Below are positions 21,342 through 26,862 of a stretch of 64,000 nt of DNA, in pieces. Made by a program: the position numbers and the translations under genes. How positions within the stretch are numbered: the stretch's first letter is position 1; the number at the start of each line of letters is the position of its first letter. The stretch is from contig OZ218959.1 of assembly GCA_965112735.1 (NCBI GenBank), positions 1,674,001 through 1,738,000 on the forward strand. Direction: 5' to 3'. The notes under the pieces were generated by a model. It was not told the DNA's origin, ran no database searches, and worked only from the letters and a program-made list of their open reading frames with translations. Source of the stretch: Phaeosaccion multiseriatum (taxonomy: Eukaryota > Protista > Ochrophyta, other classes).

Positions 21342-21845
21342 CTCCCTCCCTCCCTCCCTCCCTCCCTCCCTCCCTCCCTCCCTCCCTCCCTCCCTCCCTC
21401 CCTCCCTCCCTCCCTCCCTCCCTCCCTCCCTCCCTCCCTCCCTCCCTCCCTCCCTCCCTCCCTCCCTCCCTCCCTCCCTCCCTCCCTCCCTCCCTCCCTC
21501 CCTCCCTCCCTCCCTCCCTCCCTCCCTCCCTCCCTCCCTCCCTCCCTCCCTCCCTCCCTCCCTCCCTCCCTCCCTCCCTCCCTCCCTCCCTCCCTCCCTC
21601 CCTCCCTCCCTCCCTCCCTCCCTCCCTCCCTCCCTCCCTCCCTCCCTCCCTCCCTCCCTCCCTCCCTCCCTCCCTCCCTCCCTCCCTCCCTCCCTCCCTC
21701 CCTCCCTCCCTCCCTCCCTCCCTCCCTCCGTCCCTCCCTCTCTCCCTCCCTCCCTCCCTCCCTCCCTCCCTCCCTCCCTCCCTCCCTCCCTCTCTCCCTC
21801 CCTCCCTCCCTCCCTCCCTCGCTCCCTCCCTCTCTCCCTCCCTCC
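21342..21845 (+). repeat. (CCCT)n microsatellite, ~500 bp
   Basis: Directly visible; slightly degenerate at the right end. Confidence 0.98.
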
Positions 21846-22337
21846 TGTAAAGAGTCACGTTGCTCTCCACCTAGGATAGGAGTAGCCGCATGGACAAGGT
21901 AATAGCAACCCCAAAGCCAGCCTGGCAGCCAGCCTTGTCTCTATTAGCTTTATCCGTGAGCCATCCTAAACGACCAACCTGCTGGGAGGTGAGTGAGAAA
22001 CGGGCCACGCACCGTTTCTCACCGTATTTGCCTGGGCCTGGGCCATTGACATAATACTGACTTTCAACATCCCCGTCAGCCATCCCTGGGGCACCGTTTC
22101 TCACCGTATTTGCCTGGGCCTGGGCCATTGACATAATACTGACTTTCAACATCCCCGTCAGCCATCCCTGCACTTCTAACATCCCCCTGAACTAAACTAT
22201 TGCGTGTCCCCACGCAACTCAAAGCGGGTTCGCCTACTAAAGCTCGACTTGTAGCAAAAGCCTCCATGTTGCTTCCAATAAAAACGGATGAGAAATATGC
22301 AAAACTCACCCAGGTGTGTGCGACCGCTCCTCCAACA
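21846..22337 (-). repeat. Inverted, diverged full LTR copy with an internal 80-bp tandem duplication (22009-22088/22091-22170)
   Basis: Reverse complement aligns along 24447-24842 (TGTTGGAG...TCTTTACA vs TGTGGAG...TTCCACA), roughly 80% identical by eye. Confidence 0.85.
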
Positions 22338-22340
22338 CAC

Positions 22341-22481
22341 ATCCTCCTGTAGGTGGTCGTTTAGGACAGTGCATAGATAAGCTAATAGATACAAGGCCGG
22401 CTGTCAGGCTAGCTTTGGGGTGCTGCTACCTTATCTGTGTGTCTAGTCCGTTTCGTGGAGGTCTAAGCACGACTTTCCACA
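22341..22481 (+). repeat. Truncated 5' LTR (end of U3, R, U5)
   Basis: 100% identical to 24702-24842; ends in TCCACA. Confidence 0.9.
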
Positions 22482-22492
22482 ACCCCAAAGCT
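22482..22492 (+). promoter_or_regulatory. Self-priming primer-binding site (Tf1/sushi type)
   Basis: ACCCCAAAGCT abuts the LTR end and is the exact reverse complement of AGCTTTGGGGT at 22411-22421 within the LTR. It does not start with TGG, so it is not a standard tRNA PBS. Confidence 0.75.
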
Positions 22493-22739
22493 CGAAGACA
22501 GTTTGGCACTTGACCAATAGGCTCAGCAGAGGGAGGCTTTGAGTTCATCGTGCGCTAGACTAGCACGTGGACGTTTTTGGTTAGTGTCCAAGGCACGGAC
22601 ACGCCACAGCTTGCTCCGTCAGGGGCGTTTAGCTTAATTAGCTTTGCTTGGCTTGGCTTTGCTTGGGAACCGGTGGGAGAATTTATTTGTGGGAGAATTT
22701 ATTGGTTGGCTTTGAAAGAGTGGCACAGCAGCGCTACCG

Positions 22740-23130
22740 TGGATCGGCAGCAAGAGGTAGCTAGGGATATTGCAAGGAGCAGCTGCAGGGGCAGCAGCAG
22801 GAGGCACGGAAGGATTGGCGAGCAGCTGCAGGGGCAGCAGCAAAGGATTGGATACAGCAGCTGCAGGGGCAGCAGCAGGAGGCACGGGTATCCGCTATAC
22901 TTAATCAGAGGGGACCGCTGATTTAGAGGTTAGCGGCAGGAGATACAGCAGGCTTGGCTGGAGAGGCAGGGGGCGCAGCAGCAGGTGTTGGATACCGCAG
23001 CAGCTGCAGAGGCAGCAGCAGCAGCAGCAGGCACGGATATCAGGCATAATTAGGCACGCTCGGAGGGAGCAGCTGCAGGGGCGCAGCAAGAGGGAAGATG
23101 CCGGCATAGCGCGGCGATCGGCTGGCACAG
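22740..23130 (+). repeat. Degenerate repeats in the element leader (GCAGCTGCAGGGGCAGCAGCAGGAGGCACGG)
   Basis: About 6 partial or complete copies visible upstream of the ORF. Confidence 0.7.
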
Positions 23131-23163
23131 AGTAAGCGTACTGGCTGGTCCCAGGAGGAACCG

Positions 23164-24363
23164 ATGGGGGATCACGACATGGTCAATCGGTTGATGGAGG
23201 AGCTGCATGGAATCAGGATGGACCTTGCAGCACTTCCGGTGCTACTGGGCCAGCTATTGGGTCGGGATCCAAGGCAGCAGTCGGAGGTGCAGGTAGCTGC
23301 TGCACAGGTGGGGTCGGGCAGCAAGCAGAAACGATCTAAGGTCGACTGTGGGGCAGGGCAAGTCTTTTCGTGCTTTCACTGCAAGAAGGAGCACTGTCTC
23401 TCTCGCTGCCCTACCGAACCGACCACCGGAGCCATGGTGAGGAAGATGGTGGATGCAGGGAAGCGGTACGGCTTGGGTACAGCTTCCCAGGTGGTGGTGA
23501 CGCTTGTGCAGCGCACTGAGCAATACAAGCGCGTCCTTGCTCAGCTGGTGAAGGCCGTGACGACGACAGGGCAGGCAGCACAGCGCAGAGCCTCGAAGGA
23601 GTTGCAGACGCTAGAGCTGACGGTGGCGGCCGCGGCGCAGTCTCGGCTTCGGGTGGCGCAAGCGCAGGCTCAGGAGGAGCAGGTAGAGCAGGCTGGCGTC
23701 ACGCTTGCAGAGGGGTCAGTGTCTGCTGCGGTCCTCGAGCGGGAGCGGCAGGAGCGCGAGTCTGTTTGGCTGGAGGAGGAACAGTTGGAGCGGGCGCGTG
23801 TGTGTGCGGCTCAGGAGCGGGTGGAGAGGCGCCGCGTCGGGGAGAAAGAGAGACGGCAGCAGGCGCAACCAGCTGCCTTGGCTGAGGAAGCTCAGCGCAA
23901 GCTGCAAGAGGTACACACGCAGGCTCAAGCGGAGAGCACGCGGGTACAGCAAGTGCGGGACTGGCAAGAGCGGGAGGACGCACTGCGGGCTGTGGCTCAG
24001 CCTGTAGTGCGGGTGAATGGTGTTCTCAGTGGTCTTGGTTCCACTACCGAAGTTGGTGCGCGGCCAAAGAGGAGGGGGCGGCGGTCGAAGAAGCGCAAGG
24101 TAAGGCCCGACGGGGTCAGGGATCCGGCAAGGCAGCGCCGGTGGCAGCAGGAGATTGCAGCGGATCGTCCGGCCTGGTTGGACCGGCCTCCTCTCTCTCT
24201 GAAGGATCGGATGCAGCAAGTGGAAGCGGCGCAGGCGCGGCTGCAGAAGCTGATGGACGAGAAGGCGGCCCAGCTGCTGGCGACGGAGCAGGCCGCGCAT
24301 GGAGTGCCTCGTACGGTTGCAACGCTGGGACAGCAGGTGACGGTGGGGACGAGCCAGCGCTAG
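23164..24363 (+). CDS. Element-encoded 399-aa Gag-like protein: CCHC zinc knuckle, coiled coil, basic NLS-like patch
   Basis: Intronless ORF with CFHCKKEHCLSRC (C-x2-C-x3-H-x4-C), a long Q/E/R/A helical region and RPKRRGRRSKKRK. Confidence 0.7.
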   Translation: MGDHDMVNRLMEELHGIRMDLAALPVLLGQLLGRDPRQQSEVQVAAAQVGSGSKQKRSKVDCGAGQVFSCFHCKKEHCLSRCPTEPTTGAMVRKMVDAGKRYGLGTASQVVVTLVQRTEQYKRVLAQLVKAVTTTGQAAQRRASKELQTLELTVAAAAQSRLRVAQAQAQEEQVEQAGVTLAEGSVSAAVLERERQERESVWLEEEQLERARVCAAQERVERRRVGEKERRQQAQPAALAEEAQRKLQEVHTQAQAESTRVQQVRDWQEREDALRAVAQPVVRVNGVLSGLGSTTEVGARPKRRGRRSKKRKVRPDGVRDPARQRRWQQEIAADRPAWLDRPPLSLKDRMQQVEAAQARLQKLMDEKAAQLLATEQAAHGVPRTVATLGQQVTVGTSQR

Positions 24364-24446
24364 CGCAGCCGTGCGCAGCCACGGAGGGTGAGTTTGAGGC
24401 CTTGGGCTTTCTCACCCTGCCGTGGCAGGTGTGTGGCAGGGTGACC

Positions 24447-24842
24447 TGTGGAGTGCCACGTCACACACTGGTGGGTGAGTTTTGCATATTTCTCATCCGG
24501 TTTTTTTGGAAGCAGCATAAAGGGGTTTGCTACAGTCGAGCTTCAGTAGGTGAAAACGCTTGAGTTGCGTGGGGACACGCAACAGTCTTGTCAGGGGAGT
24601 GTTAGAAGTGCAGGGATGGCTGACGGGGATGTGGAAAGTCAGTCGTATGTCAGTGGCCCAGGCCTAGGCAACGCAGTGAGAAACGGTGCCCGTTTCTCAC
24701 TATCCTCCTGTAGGTGGTCGTTTAGGACAGTGCATAGATAAGCTAATAGATACAAGGCCGGCTGTCAGGCTAGCTTTGGGGTGCTGCTACCTTATCTGTG
24801 TGTCTAGTCCGTTTCGTGGAGGTCTAAGCACGACTTTCCACA
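24447..24842 (+). repeat. Full 3' LTR (396 bp, TGTGGA...TCCACA)
   Basis: 6-bp terminal inverted repeat. Internal hairpins TTGCGTG-GGGA-CACGCAA and AGTGAGAAACGG-TGC-CCGTTTCTCACT (24675-24701). Confidence 0.75.
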
Positions 24843-26862
24843 CTCCCTCCCTCCCTCCCTCCCTCCCTCCCTCCCTCCCTCCCTCCCTCCCTCCCTCCCT
24901 CCCTCCCTCCCTCCCTCCCTCCCTCCCTCCCTCCCTCCCTCCCTCCCTCCCTCCCTCCCTCCCTCCCTCCCTCCCTCCCTCCCTCCCTCCCTCCCTCCCT
25001 CCCTCCCTCCCTCCCTCCCTCCCTCCCTCCCTCCCTCCCTCCCTCCCTCCCTCCCTCCCTCCCTCCCTCCCTCCCTCCCTCCCTCCCTCCCTCCCTCCCT
25101 CCCTCCCTCCCTCCCTCCCTCCCTCCCTCCCTCCCTCCCTCCCTCCCTCCCTCCCTCCCTCCCTCCCTCCCTCCCTCCCTCCCTCCCTCCCTCCCTCCCT
25201 CCCTCCCTCCCTCCCTCCCTCCCTCCCTCCCTCCCTCCCTCCCTCCCTCCCTCCCTCCCTCCCTCCCTCCCTCCCTCCCTCCCTCCCTCCCTCCCTCCCT
25301 CCCTCCCTCCCTCCCTCCCTCCCTCCCTCCCTCCCTCCCTCCCTCCCTCCCTCCCTCCCTCCCTCCCTCCCTCCCTCCCTCCCTCCCTCCCTCCCTCCCT
25401 CCCTCCCTCCCTCCCTCCCTCCCTCCCTCCCTCCCTCCCTCCCTCCCTCCCTCCCTCCCTCCCTCCCTCCCTCCCTCCCTCCCTCCCTCCCTCCCTCCCT
25501 CCCTCCCTCCCTCCCTCCCTCCCTCCCTCCCTCCCTCCCTCCCTCCCTCCCTCCCTCCCTCCCTCCCTCCCTCCCTCCCTCCCTCCCTCCCTCCCTCCCT
25601 CCCTCCCTCCCTCCCTCCCTCCCTCCCTCCCTCCCTCCCTCCCTCCCTCCCTCCCTCCCTCCCTCCCTCCCTCCCTCCCTCCCTCCCTCCCTCCCTCCCT
25701 CCCTCCCTCCCTCCCTCCCTCCCTCCCTCCCTCCCTCCCTCCCTCCCTCCCTCCCTCCCTCCCTCCCTCCCTCCCTCCCTCCCTCCCTCCCTCCCTCCCT
25801 CCCTCCCTCCCTCCCTCCCTCCCTCCCTCCCTCCCTCCCTCCCTCCCTCCCTCCCTCCCTCCCTCCCTCCCTCCCTCCCTCCCTCCCTCCCTCCCTCCCT
25901 CCCTCCCTCCCTCCCTCCCTCCCTCCCTCCCTCCCTCCCTCCCTCCCTCCCTCCCTCCCTCCCTCCCTCCCTCCCTCCCTCCCTCCCTCCCTCCCTCCCT
26001 CCCTCCCTCCCTCCCTCCCTCCCTCCCTCCCTCCCTCCCTCCCTCCCTCCCTCCCTCCCTCCCTCCCTCCCTCCCTCCCTCCCTCCCTCCCTCCCTCCCT
26101 CCCTCCCTCCCTCCCTCCCTCCCTCCCTCCCTCCCTCCCTCCCTCCCTCCCTCCCTCCCTCCCTCCCTCCCTCCCTCCCTCCCTCCCTCCCTCCCTCCCT
26201 CCCTCCCTCCCTCCCTCCCTCCCTCCCTCCCTCCCTCCCTCCCTCCCTCCCTCCCTCCCTCCCTCCCTCCCTCCCTCCCTCCCTCCCTCCCTCCCTCCCT
26301 CCCTCCCTCCCTCCCTCCCTCCCTCCCTCCCTCCCTCCCTCCCTCCCTCCCTCCCTCCCTCCCTCCCTCCCTCCCTCCCTCCCTCCCTCCCTCCCTCCCT
26401 CCCTCCCTCCCTCCCTCCCTCCCTCCCTCCCTCCCTCCCTCCCTCCCTCCCTCCCTCCCTCCCTCCCTCCCTCCCTCCCTCCCTCCCTCCCTCCCTCCCT
26501 CCCTCCCTCCCTCCCTCCCTCCCTCCCTCCCTCCCTCCCTCCCTCCCTCCCTCCCTCCCTCCCTCCCTCCCTCCCTCCCTCCCTCCCTCCCTCCCTCCCT
26601 CCCTCCCTCCCTCCCTCCCTCCCTCCCTCCCTCCCTCCCTCCCTCCCTCCCTCCCTCCCTCCCTCCCTCCCTCCCTCCCTCCCTCCCTCCCTCCCTCCCT
26701 CCCTCCCTCCCTCCCTCCCTCCCTCCCTCCCTCCCTCCCTCCCTCCCTCCCTCCCTCCCTCCCTCCCTCCCTCCCTCCCTCCCTCCCTCCCTCCCTCCCT
26801 CCCTCCCTCCCTCCCTCCCTCCCTCCCTCCCTCCCTCCCTCCCTCCCTCCCTCCCTCCCTCC
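24843..26862 (+). repeat. Perfect (CCCT)n tract, ~2.0 kb
   Basis: No interruptions seen. Confidence 0.98.

What the first reader, a model, noticed from the sequence alone, without database searches (positions are those of the whole stretch)
21846..24842. Inverted-LTR cap gives a ~3 kb unit with ~400-bp imperfect terminal inverted repeats and TGT...ACA ends
Seen: the layout is [full diverged LTR, inverted]-[last 141 bp of LTR]-PBS-ORF-[full LTR]. Both outer ends are therefore U5 ends, and both abut (CCCT)n in register (CTCC|TGT ... ACA|CTCC, compatible with a 4-bp TSD). The 5' LTR is truncated exactly 3' of the 12-bp hairpin (24675-24701 in the intact copy), and the 80-bp duplication in the inverted LTR also ends in that hairpin loop. 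Established: TGT...ACA with 4-bp TSDs typifies Ginger transposons and some Gypsy integrases; non-identical ITRs with an internal complementary region typify DIRS. This layout matches neither exactly. Inference: either two head-to-head insertions followed by deletion or template switching, or a unit that moves as a whole (an LTR-to-TIR intermediate or a new replication scheme).
Basis: partly seen in the sequence, partly recalled or inferred. Interest (0 to 1): 0.75.

Follow-up and report, generated by a model that had tools for sequence, protein, structure and literature searches.

The report
Inverted chimera of two retrotransposons
This 3-kb unit is a single-copy fusion of the turned-around tail of one small jumping gene to a second one that lacks the first 72 bases of its terminal repeat; it is most likely a misfire of reverse transcription pasted into the genome in one piece, one of about a dozen such misfires in this alga and not a new kind of mobile element.

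Summary
The layout is real, but its parts were mislabelled. The true LTR of the gag-only element (family A) is 213 bp (24630-24842, TGTGGAAAGTC...GACTTTCCACA), not about 400 bp. The "diverged inverted LTR" (21846-22351) is the last ~424 bp of a sister non-autonomous family (B, 224-bp LTR). It is 99.6-100% identical to B copies elsewhere and carries a private 82-bp duplication. B joins A at a 10/11-nt homology (A[C/T]CCTCCTGTA), at the first base 3' of the LTR hairpin (A73).

The exact junction occurs once in the 67-Mb genome, so this composite has not multiplied. Composites of A, B and related LTRs are nevertheless recurrent. I mapped 11. Six of the nine that lie in unique DNA are bracketed by one matching 4-bp duplication (P about 3e-13), although both outer ends are of one type (U5/U5 or U3/U3). 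Most of their internal joints fall on reverse-transcription landmarks: PBS-tailed plus-strand ends, starts just after polypurine runs, the self-primer edge and the hairpin base.

Best reading (0.55): a chimeric cDNA made by aberrant strand transfer and integrated once, as a unit, into (CCCT)n. The DIRS and Ginger readings fail. This is a new variant of known template-switch "complex" insertions. Earlier notes of this scan already reported hairpin-shaped by-products of this self-priming family elsewhere in the genome.

The parts
21344..21845 (.). Left flank: (CCCT)n microsatellite, degenerate near the junction, ending ...CCCTCC
   Evidence: arrays at 21344-21727, 21744-21791 and 21796-21819.
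21846..22069 (-). Complete 224-bp LTR of family B, inverted. Its U5 end (TGTAAAGAGTC on the + strand) abuts the microsatellite.
   Evidence: 100% identical over 1-224 to at least 15 B LTRs on other contigs. Termini shown.
22009..22170 (-). Private tandem duplication (22009-22088 = 22091-22170, with a GG filler). The unit is B positions 1467-1546: a 19-nt polypurine region plus LTR 1-61. Its edge lies in the loop of the B LTR hairpin.
   Evidence: D7, 80/80 identical; the B copies compared carry the unit once.
22152..22351 (-). Inverted 3' internal tail of family B (B 1485 down to 1286). It ends at the purine run ACAGGAGGG | TGTGTG.
   Evidence: 99.6% identical to B copies. The single mismatch is T at 22342.
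22341..22351 (.). B/A joint. An 11-nt homology block, A[C/T]CCTCCTGTA, matches 10 of 11 between B and A. The one discriminating base (22342) is A-type.
   Evidence: Three-way comparison. The exact junction is unique in the genome.
22341..22481 (+). Truncated 5' LTR of family A (LTR positions 73-213). The first 72 bp, including the hairpin, are missing.
   Evidence: 141/141 identical to 24702-24842. The A73 breakpoint exists at only two loci in the genome.
22482..22492 (+). Primer-binding site ACCCCAAAGCT, complementary to AGCTTTGGGGT inside the LTR (22411-22421 and 24772-24782). This is a Tf1-like self-priming signature, not a tRNA site.
   Evidence: Sequence. The same pairing, shifted, is seen in family B. 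Earlier scan notes reached the same reading.
23164..24363 (+). Only long ORF (399 aa). It is gag-like and coiled-coil rich, with one C-X2-C-X3-H-X4-C knuckle (residues 70-82). No pol is present.
   Evidence: ORF; no Pfam family over its cut-off; relatives occur only in about 16 A copies plus one close sister family.
24592..24629 (+). Two polypurine-type sites: CAGGGGAG|TGTTAGAAG (a secondary site, 30 nt upstream) and GACGGGGA|TGTGG (the main one).
   Evidence: Copies with a 30-nt 5' extension that starts at TGTTAGAAG recur at C1, C14, C9 and C3.
24630..24842 (+). Complete 213-bp 3' LTR of family A (TGTGGAAAGTC...GACTTTCCACA). It contains the hairpin at 24675-24701 and the self-primer motif at 24772-24782.
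24843..26860 (.). Right flank: perfect (CCCT)n, in register with the left flank.

Best explanation
The unit is one aberrant reverse-transcription product of two co-replicating, non-autonomous, self-priming LTR retroelements. Family A is gag-only, 2.58 kb, with a 213-bp LTR. Family B is non-coding, 1.71 kb, with a 224-bp LTR.

Inferred sequence of events:
1. While the A minus strand was finishing the 5' LTR, synthesis stopped at LTR position 73, the base of a stable 12-bp hairpin.
2. Its 3' end (...CCTACAGGAGGAT) annealed to the near-identical TACAGGAGGGT just upstream of the 3' tail on a B minus-strand cDNA.
3. It was extended to the 5' end of that template, which is exactly the B U5 terminus. 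On the way it stuttered once at the B hairpin and made the 82-bp duplication.
4. The resulting molecule had a proper ...ACA-3' LTR end on both sides (U5 of B, U5 of A). An integrase supplied in trans inserted it in one step into a (CCCT)n array.

What is shown: the anatomy, the identity of the two parts, the homology at the joint, the uniqueness of the joint, and that sister composites are integrated as units. What is inferred: the order of strand transfers and the role of the hairpin. The composite is a dead-end by-product, not a unit that replicates as such.
For: 1. The parts are two different young families. The inverted block is 99.6-100% identical to B copies, and A's LTR remnant is 141/141 identical to its 3' LTR. 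A locus with no base change between the inverted block and other B copies, or between A's two LTR segments, would otherwise need two insertions, a deletion and a duplication.
2. The joint lies in a 10/11-nt homology, and the discriminating base is A-type. That fits a nascent A minus strand invading a B template.
3. The left end stops exactly at the B U5 terminus, the run-off point of a minus-strand template.
4. A73 is a joint at exactly two loci in the genome. Both are inside composites and both are the first base after the hairpin.
5. Ten other composites were mapped. Their joints are:
- PBS-tailed LTR ends (8-11 nt of ACCCCAAAG...) joined to A73;
- the same ends joined to an internal GAGAAAGAGAGA run;
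- the same ends joined to the base after the self-primer motif;
- the same ends joined in reverse to the self-primer motif (4 loci);
- blunt or near-blunt U3|U3 joints, including one that starts just after a GTGGGG run.
Most of these are ends of canonical reverse-transcription intermediates.
6. Six of nine composites in unique DNA have one matching 4-bp TSD around the whole composite although both ends are of one type: CCAC, GACT, GTGC, ATGC, TCCA, CAAC. All 7 simple copies checked also have one. P(at least 6 of 9 by chance) is about 3e-13.
7. Published precedent: direct 'complex' insertions with flanking TSDs ascribed to template switching between co-packaged RNAs (PMC1950507); about half of the cDNA of self-priming Tf1 retains the PBS as a single-stranded 3' tail that anneals elsewhere (PMC11042837); fold-back self-priming of strong-stop DNA as a dead-end reaction (PMC6088434).
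Against: - At this locus the TSD test is void. In a period-4 microsatellite any 4-bp TSD, or none, keeps the register.
- A and B copies cluster. Two independent A insertions with their own TSDs lie 136 bp apart on C8, so two nearby insertions followed by a microhomology deletion cannot be excluded here.
- Hairpins are also hotspots for replication slippage in chromosomal DNA.
- Three composites lack a TSD, so some rearrangements are not simple integrase events.
- The branched intermediate implied by the model needs host repair that I cannot show.
- The autonomous partner and its integrase were not identified.
- No read-level data were available to exclude a misjoin next to the long microsatellite.
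Confidence: 0.55

Rival explanations
1. Two independent insertions, B in minus and A in plus orientation, landed head-to-head in the same (CCCT)n array. A later chromosomal deletion between the 10/11-nt homology (microhomology-mediated end joining or replication slippage at the hairpin) removed B's 5' 1.3 kb, the spacer and A's first 72 bp. The 82-bp duplication was a separate slippage event.
For: The families cluster: two A copies with separate TSDs lie 136 bp apart on C8. Deletions often end at microhomologies and palindromes. The register match has a 1-in-4 chance under random phase.
Against: This reading needs four events at a locus with no base change between the B block (about 500 bp) and other B copies, or between A's 141-bp LTR pair. 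It does not explain why analogous composites in unique DNA carry one TSD around the whole. It does not explain why A73 is a joint only in composites whose partner end is a reverse-transcription terminus.
Confidence: 0.2
2. A resident B(-) copy in the microsatellite was hit by an integrase-independent insertion of an A cDNA. The left end of the cDNA recombined with B by single-strand annealing or microhomology, and the right end was joined to broken (CCCT)n. B's 5' part was lost in the process.
For: Tf1, the model self-priming element, uses a Rad52 single-strand-annealing route that inserts cDNA at resident elements and at short homologies (PMC11042837). Three local composites have no TSD. Both composites found in (CCCT)n (window and C1) could be captures at a fragile repeat.
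Against: The Tf1 route uses the PBS or polypurine tails of the cDNA. Here the joint is at A73, inside the LTR. The A U5 end is intact to the last base and in register with the repeat, as expected for integrase. No inverted products are reported for that route in the paper (no occurrence of 'inverted').
Confidence: 0.15
3. Assembly artefact: reads from a B copy and an A copy were misjoined next to a long simple repeat.
For: The unit is flanked by 0.5 kb and 2 kb of (CCCT)n, which is hard to assemble. The joint is unique. No reads could be inspected.
Against: A misjoin would normally fall in shared sequence, not at an 11-nt homology between non-homologous positions. The private 82-bp duplication and the exact U5 ends argue for a real molecule. 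Eight other composites lie in unique DNA on six other contigs (C3, C4, C8, C9, C12, C14) and one on another part of C10.
Confidence: 0.04
4. The composite is a functional new element type, an LTR-derived unit with long terminal inverted repeats that transposes as a whole.
For: Both ends are integrase-competent, and sister composites show that such molecules can be integrated. Earlier scan notes report multi-copy hairpin-ended mini-elements with LTR tips in this genome.
Against: There is one copy only. The other composite joints that I searched genome-wide are singletons too. No route is known by which RNA-based copying would reproduce an inverted 5' cap. The element encodes no transposase or recombinase.
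Confidence: 0.03

Closest known systems
'Complex' LTR-retrotransposon insertions made by template switching between co-packaged RNAs (Sabot & Schulman 2007, PMC1950507); tandem LTR-element structures that retain TSDs in plants (PMC13570524)
   Same: Two element bodies in one insertion. A single flanking TSD shows one integration event. The origin is placed in reverse transcription inside the particle. Two different families can be fused.
   Different: The published cases are direct tandems that share a complete internal LTR and have normal U3...U5 outer ends. Here the parts are inverted, the outer ends are of one type (U5/U5 in the window; U3/U3 elsewhere), and the joints lie at strong-stop termini, a hairpin base or short homologies, not in R.
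Tf1/Tf2 of fission yeast: self-primed reverse transcription, PBS-tailed cDNA and integrase-independent insertion (Li et al. 2022, PMC11042837)
   Same: There is no tRNA primer site; the PBS pairs with the element's own LTR-derived sequence. In Tf1 about half of the cDNA retains the PBS as a single-stranded 3' tail; here 8-11 PBS nucleotides are retained at many joints. Tandem and hybrid products occur between two related families.
   Different: Tf1 is autonomous and makes 5-bp TSDs; A and B are pol-less and make 4-bp TSDs. Self-priming is inferred here from sequence only. The paper reports no inverted products. Most composites here still look integrase-inserted.
Fold-back self-priming of HIV-1 minus-strand strong-stop DNA (Guo et al. 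1997, as reviewed in PMC6088434)
   Same: A hairpin-forming or self-complementary 3' end of a strong-stop DNA primes on the wrong template and gives inverted dead-end products.
   Different: That reaction is known as an in-vitro side reaction suppressed by nucleocapsid protein and is not seen in endogenous reactions with HIV-1 particles. Here the products are fixed in a genome, and several involve the plus-strand PBS tail.
Non-autonomous LTR elements (LARD/TRIM-type, gag-only derivatives)
   Same: Short LTRs with TG...CA ends, PBS, polypurine tract and TSD, no pol, mobilised in trans.
   Different: The window unit is not a normal member. Its 5' LTR is truncated and capped by the inverted 3' end of a second family.
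DIRS retrotransposons and Ginger DNA transposons
   Same: The resemblance is superficial: non-identical inverted ends (DIRS); TGT...ACA ends and a 4-bp TSD (Ginger).
   Different: There is no tyrosine recombinase, no internal complementary region and no integrase-like transposase. The family's normal copies have direct LTRs and TSDs. The unit is single-copy.

Membership tests
LTR retrotransposon, non-autonomous (family A part, 22341-24842) | Direct LTRs with TG...CA ends and short terminal inverted repeats | tested here: met
   213-bp LTR TGTGGAAAGTC...GACTTTCCACA in more than a dozen A copies. In the window the 5' LTR is truncated to 141 bp.
LTR retrotransposon, non-autonomous (family A part, 22341-24842) | Primer site next to the 5' LTR and a polypurine tract next to the 3' LTR | tested here: met
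   ACCCCAAAGCT pairs with AGCTTTGGGGT in the LTR. GACGGGGA lies immediately 5' of the 3' LTR. Priming itself was not tested.
LTR retrotransposon, non-autonomous (family A part, 22341-24842) | Target-site duplication of fixed length | tested here: met
   A 4-bp TSD in 7 of 7 simple A and B copies.
LTR retrotransposon, non-autonomous (family A part, 22341-24842) | No reverse transcriptase or integrase of its own | tested here: met
   The only long ORF is gag-like and matches no Pfam family over its cut-off. The autonomous partner was not found.
Template-switch complex insertion (Sabot-Schulman type) | One TSD around the whole composite | tested here: inconclusive
   In the window, CTCC/CTCC lies inside (CCCT)n and is uninformative. 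The feature is met at 6 of 9 sister composites in unique DNA.
Template-switch complex insertion (Sabot-Schulman type) | Two bodies in direct order that share a complete internal LTR | tested here: not met
   The parts are inverted and the joint is at A73/B1298, with no shared LTR.
DIRS | Tyrosine recombinase and RT/RNase H genes | tested here: not met
   No such ORF in 21846-24842.
DIRS | Inverted terminal repeats plus an internal complementary region, and no TSD | tested here: not met
   Normal copies have direct LTRs and 4-bp TSDs. The inverted cap is private to this locus.
Ginger / integrase-type DNA transposon | Encoded integrase-like transposase, or a multi-copy non-autonomous derivative with the same TIRs | tested here: not met
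   There is no transposase ORF and the unit is single-copy.
Tf1-like self-priming elements | PBS complementary to the element's own R/5' RNA sequence in place of a tRNA | tested here: met
   An 11-nt complementarity in A and a shifted 11-nt complementarity in B. The transcript start and RNase H cut are not testable with these tools.

The most novel reading that the evidence does not exclude
The inverted, same-end composites could be more than dead ends. They may be the birth route of the multi-copy hairpin-ended or palindromic mini-elements with LTR tips and 4-bp TSDs that earlier notes of this scan report in this alga. That would be a natural LTR-to-TIR transition, in which misfired strong-stop DNAs of a self-priming retroelement become integrase-mobilised elements with their own, still unknown, mode of copying.
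Probability: 0.1. Interest if true: 0.8.

Novelty: new variant of a known kind. Interest (0 to 1): 0.45.

Why it matters
Aberrant strand transfers of reverse transcription are mostly known from test-tube reactions and engineered vectors. Here a young, self-priming retroelement family has left a readable genomic record of them. Most joints fall at the ends of canonical intermediates, and the products are still inserted with a clean 4-bp duplication even when both ends are U5 or both are U3.

This suggests that the integrase acting on these elements accepts two ends of one type in vivo. It suggests that a primer site complementary to the element's own LTR makes inverted misfires an inherent hazard. 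It also offers a concrete, testable source for the palindromic mini-elements seen elsewhere in this genome.

For annotation, such loci should not be read as long-TIR transposons or as 400-bp LTRs.

Tried and rejected
- A 400-bp LTR: rejected. The 5' repeats are 213 bp (A) and 224 bp (B) in all normal copies.
- 'Diverged copy of the same LTR': rejected. The block is family B at 99.6-100% identity.
- DIRS or Ginger membership: rejected.
- Autonomous partner, not identified:
  - The 7.3-kb B-LTR pair on C14 (L043) and the 8-kb A copy on C10 each hold a nested RVT_2 (copia-type) element. The L043 insert has its own 153-bp LTRs and a 5-bp TSD.
  - C3:101000-110900 (L045) holds an unrelated large ORF next to a B 5' LTR.
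  - C1:741500-750800 (L044) holds an RVT_1 ORF with its own ~340-bp repeats, next to a separate related LTR.
  - Integrase-core hits did not line up with polypurine-plus-LTR sites.
- The gag protein has no relatives in the genome outside A and one close sister family.
- Metagenome scans for the junction and for the polypurine-plus-LTR-start motif: 0 hits.
- A loose LTR-end+PBS pattern with 3 mismatches was mostly noise.
Only about 25 of more than 200 LTR loci were inspected, and they were chosen for odd LTR spacing, so composite frequencies are not population estimates.
Natural copies (C12:1589698-1592280 and C7:2041043-2042751) served as coordinate references.
- The contig is algal, not human.
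Full report
**Setting**

The window is C10:1674001-1738000 of a 67-Mb, 22-contig, ~58% G+C genome. Earlier notes of this scan call it a photosynthetic stramenopile-type microalga. It is not human. Two natural copies served as coordinate references: A = C12:1589698-1592280 (2,583 bp) and B = C7:2041043-2042751 (1,709 bp).

**What is at 21846-24842**

The sequence, the repeat finder and a BLAST of the unit against 41 loci fetched from the same genome agree on the following layout:

- (CCCT)n left flank.
- Inverted block, 21846-22351.
- Direct element, 22341-24842, overlapping the block by 11 nt.
- (CCCT)n right flank.

The direct element has, in order:

- a 141-bp repeat (22341-22481) identical to 24702-24842;
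- ACCCCAAAGCT;
- a leader rich in CAG repeats;
- one 399-aa gag-like ORF (23164-24363), which has a C-X2-C-X3-H-X4-C knuckle and matches no Pfam family over its cut-off;
- a 3' tail;
- the terminal repeat.

**The LTR is 213 bp, not about 400 bp**

A search with 24380-24847 found at least 51 matches in the genome. Typical copies pair a short 5' match (query 251-463) with a full 3' match about 2.4 kb away. The repeat shared by both ends of normal copies is 24630-24842. It reads TGTGGAAAGTC...GACTTTCCACA, with 11-bp terminal inverted repeats, and GACGGGGA lies immediately upstream of the 3' copy.

Family A has about 16 gag-bearing copies. The four simple A copies whose flanks I checked each have a 4-bp TSD.

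**The inverted block is the 3' end of another family**

Positions 21846-22088 and 22091-22351 match about 20 other loci at 99.6-100%. In those loci the two stretches overlap by 80 bp. They belong to family B, which has these features:

- 1.71 kb long;
- 224-bp LTR TGTTGAAAGTC...GACTCTTTACA;
- primer site ACCCCAAAGAA...;
- internal 113-bp tandem repeats.

B LTRs are numerous: 218 first-look candidates, many 100% identical to one another. At least 38 sites combine the polypurine tract with a B LTR start.

The window block is therefore B positions 1286-1709 in reverse: a complete LTR plus 200 bp of tail. It also carries a private 82-bp tandem duplication (unit B1467-1546, filler GG). One edge of the duplication lies in the loop of the B LTR hairpin.

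A and B are 79-86% alike over LTR and tail.

**The joint**

A three-way comparison gives:

- B: ...CCAACACACA-C-CCTCCTGTA-TTGGTG
- A: ...TTTCTCACTA-T-CCTCCTGTA-GGTGGT
- window: ...CCAACACACA-T-CCTCCTGTA-GGTGGT

B and A thus share 10 of 11 nt at the joint, and the one discriminating base is A-type. On the A side the joint is LTR position 73. This is the first base after a 12-bp-stem hairpin (dG -12.5 kcal/mol, z -6.7; B has the same stem). On the B side it is the boundary between a purine run (ACAGGAGGG) and TGTGTG.

The exact 24-nt junction occurs once in the genome. The 20 near-matches are ordinary B copies. Neither the junction nor the family motif is present in the metagenome collection.

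**The window is not alone**

Mapping A and B onto the fetched loci showed ten more composites.

With both U5 ends outward:
- C12:1587018-1592280. A(-) has a 5' end extended by 59 nt, starting right after a GTGGGG run. One or two extra bases follow, then A(+).
- C8:1597730-1604040. A(-) is joined blunt, U3 start to U3 start, to B(+). A second B follows, joined as LTR end + AACCCCAA + the base after the self-primer motif.

With both U3 ends outward:
- C10:1914314-1924676. A(+), with a nested RVT_2 (copia-type) element, then 9 nt of PBS, then A(-) from position 2269.
- C3:4082499-4082877. LTR 1-164 is joined at the self-primer motif to a full inverted B LTR.
- C9:1529111-1529870. A 730-bp palindrome of B LTR plus an otherwise unique core, with a 30-nt extension on one side.
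- C14:2744286-2746008. A full B, 14 bp, then an inverted solo B LTR.
- C1:1799265-1801269. A LTR plus PBS is joined through the 11-nt PBS/self-primer complementarity to an inverted B. This one lies in (GGGA)n.

Without a TSD:
- C14:1506811-1510586. A1-224 | A1571-2583 | PBS9 | A73-2583.
- C16:506804-507149.
- C4:4080003-4080214.

**Unit integration**

All 7 simple copies and 6 of the 9 composites in unique DNA have identical 4-bp flanks: CCAC, GACT, GTGC, ATGC, TCCA and CAAC. The chance of at least 6 of 9 is about 3e-13.

In C14:2744286-2746008 neither part has a TSD of its own, but the whole does. These molecules therefore existed as composites before integration. They were inserted by an integrase-type reaction even though both ends were of one type. 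That is plausible given the near-identical 11-bp tips of the U3 and U5 ends.

For the window and for C1 the test is void, because a 4-bp TSD cannot be seen in a period-4 repeat. The flanks are merely in register.

**Where the joints fall**

Eight of the eleven joints I resolved involve one of the following:
- an LTR end that still carries 8-11 nt of the primer site, which is the 3' end of plus-strand strong-stop DNA;
- a start directly after a purine run (GACGGGGA, CAGGGGAG, GTGGGG, GAGAAAGAGAGA);
- the edge of the self-primer motif.

The reverse 'LTR end + ACCCCAAAG + inverted LTR from the self-primer' joint occurs at four loci with three different donor LTRs. This is expected if the PBS tail, which is by design complementary to the LTR, anneals to the wrong strand.

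A73 is a joint at exactly two loci in the genome. In the second it is fused to a PBS-tailed LTR end. I read A73 as a stop of DNA synthesis at the base of the hairpin, or as a 5' end of a plus-strand species. Which of the two cannot be decided here.

**Mechanism proposed for the window (inferred)**

1. The A minus strand, copying plus-strand strong-stop DNA to complete the 5' LTR, halted at position 73.
2. Its 3' end, ...TACAGGAGGAT, paired with the complement of TACAGGAGGGT on a B minus-strand cDNA in the same particle. This explains the A-type base inside the homology.
3. Extension ran to the 5' end of that template, which is the B U5 terminus. There was one 80-nt back-slip at the B hairpin.
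4. The product has an A U5 end and a B U5 end.
5. Integrase joined both to (CCCT)n, and host repair resolved the internal flaps.

The locus is very young. There is no substitution in the 141-bp LTR pair, and none in about 500 bp of B other than the A-type base at the joint.

**Rivals**

- Two neighbouring insertions followed by a microhomology deletion stay possible. The families cluster (two A copies lie 136 bp apart on C8, each with its own TSD), and hairpins also provoke replication slippage.
- An integrase-independent annealing route like that of Tf1 (PMC11042837) is a second post-integration option.
- A misassembly beside the long repeat cannot be excluded without reads.
- A self-propagating TIR-type element is nearly excluded. 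The composite joints that I searched genome-wide occur once each: the window joint, the blunt U3|U3 joint, the C1 joint, the C3:4772837 LTR-end+PBS joint and the C9 palindrome core.

**Comparison with what is known**

- Direct 'complex' insertions with flanking TSDs have been explained by template switching between co-packaged RNAs (PMC1950507). Tandem structures that retain TSDs are common in plants (PMC13570524).
- In self-priming Tf1 about half of the cDNA retains the PBS as a single-stranded 3' tail, which anneals to homologous sites (PMC11042837).
- Fold-back self-priming of strong-stop DNA is a known dead-end reaction in vitro (PMC6088434).
- In four literature searches on these themes I found no description of inverted, same-end composites fixed in a genome with a single TSD. 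That is an absence in a limited library, not proof of novelty.
- Earlier notes of this scan had already reported the self-priming signature of these families and 'hairpin-shaped by-products' elsewhere in this genome. I treated them as leads and re-derived the structures from sequence.

**Verdict**

- The window unit is a one-off chimeric insertion, most likely formed before integration.
- The class it belongs to is a new variant of template-switch complex insertions.
- Its wider interest lies in the genome-wide pattern, not in this locus.

Noticed in passing
L043:575-6311 (C14:2329274-2335010) and C10:1914697-1920118: Both a B copy and an A copy carry a nested element with an RVT_2 (copia-type) reverse transcriptase. 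The L043 insert has 153-bp LTRs (TGTTGGGATATC...CTCAACA) and a 5-bp TSD, GAACA. Two nested hits in such small targets may point to a preference for these elements or their neighbourhood.
   Followed up: partly
window 24570-24629; C1:1801240-1801269; C14:2351645-2351674; C9:1529111-1529140; L045:9413-9442; C12:1589638-1589696: Three purine-run|TG sites precede the LTR: GTGGGGA|CACG, CAGGGGAG|TGTTAGAAG and GACGGGGA|TGTGG. Copies whose 5' LTR is extended by exactly 30 nt, starting at TGTTAGAAG, recur in A and B, and one copy is extended by 59 nt. This suggests alternative plus-strand start sites, one of which also serves as a pseudo-LTR end for integration.
   Followed up: partly
L049:312-1071 (C9:1529111-1529870): A 760-bp element is a 730-bp palindrome (arms 97% alike) of a B LTR plus about 130 bp of leader-like sequence found nowhere else in the genome. 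It is flanked by the TSD TCCA. The origin of the unique core is unknown.
   Followed up: partly
C7:2042741-2042758 (L036): One simple B copy has three extra bases (ACC, the first bases of the primer site) between its 3' LTR end and the TSD TGGG. The end was apparently integrated without normal trimming.
   Followed up: no
window 21344-21845 and 24843-26860; C1:1799200-1799264 and 1801270-1801340: Both composites that lie in simple sequence sit in the same microsatellite, (CCCT)n/(GGGA)n, with flanks CTCC and GGAG. The window alone holds 2.9 kb of (CCCT)n runs of 5 or more units. Whether this is chance in an abundant repeat or capture at a fragile repeat is open.
   Followed up: partly
L044:3120-5264 and L044:8556-8795 (C1:741500-750800): A third related LTR family (TGTTGGAAGG...GTCGTTTTACA) keeps the GGCTTTGGGGTTGC motif. 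It lies next to an element with an RVT_1-type reverse transcriptase ORF that has its own ~340-bp repeats. No link between the two was shown.
   Followed up: partly
window 23842-23853: A perfect internal polypurine run, GAGAAAGAGAGA, lies inside the gag-like ORF. At C14:1507035 a composite joint starts exactly at this run, as if it can prime plus-strand synthesis like a central polypurine tract.
   Followed up: no
C3:97329 (L033) and C3:4771269 (L034): Two B copies have 5' LTRs truncated at positions 85 and 62, near or inside the LTR hairpin. The one whose outer flanks I compared (C3:97329-98953) has no matching TSD. In the other, the 3' LTR is cut at the self-primer motif and joined to an inverted LTR of the third family.
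   Followed up: partly
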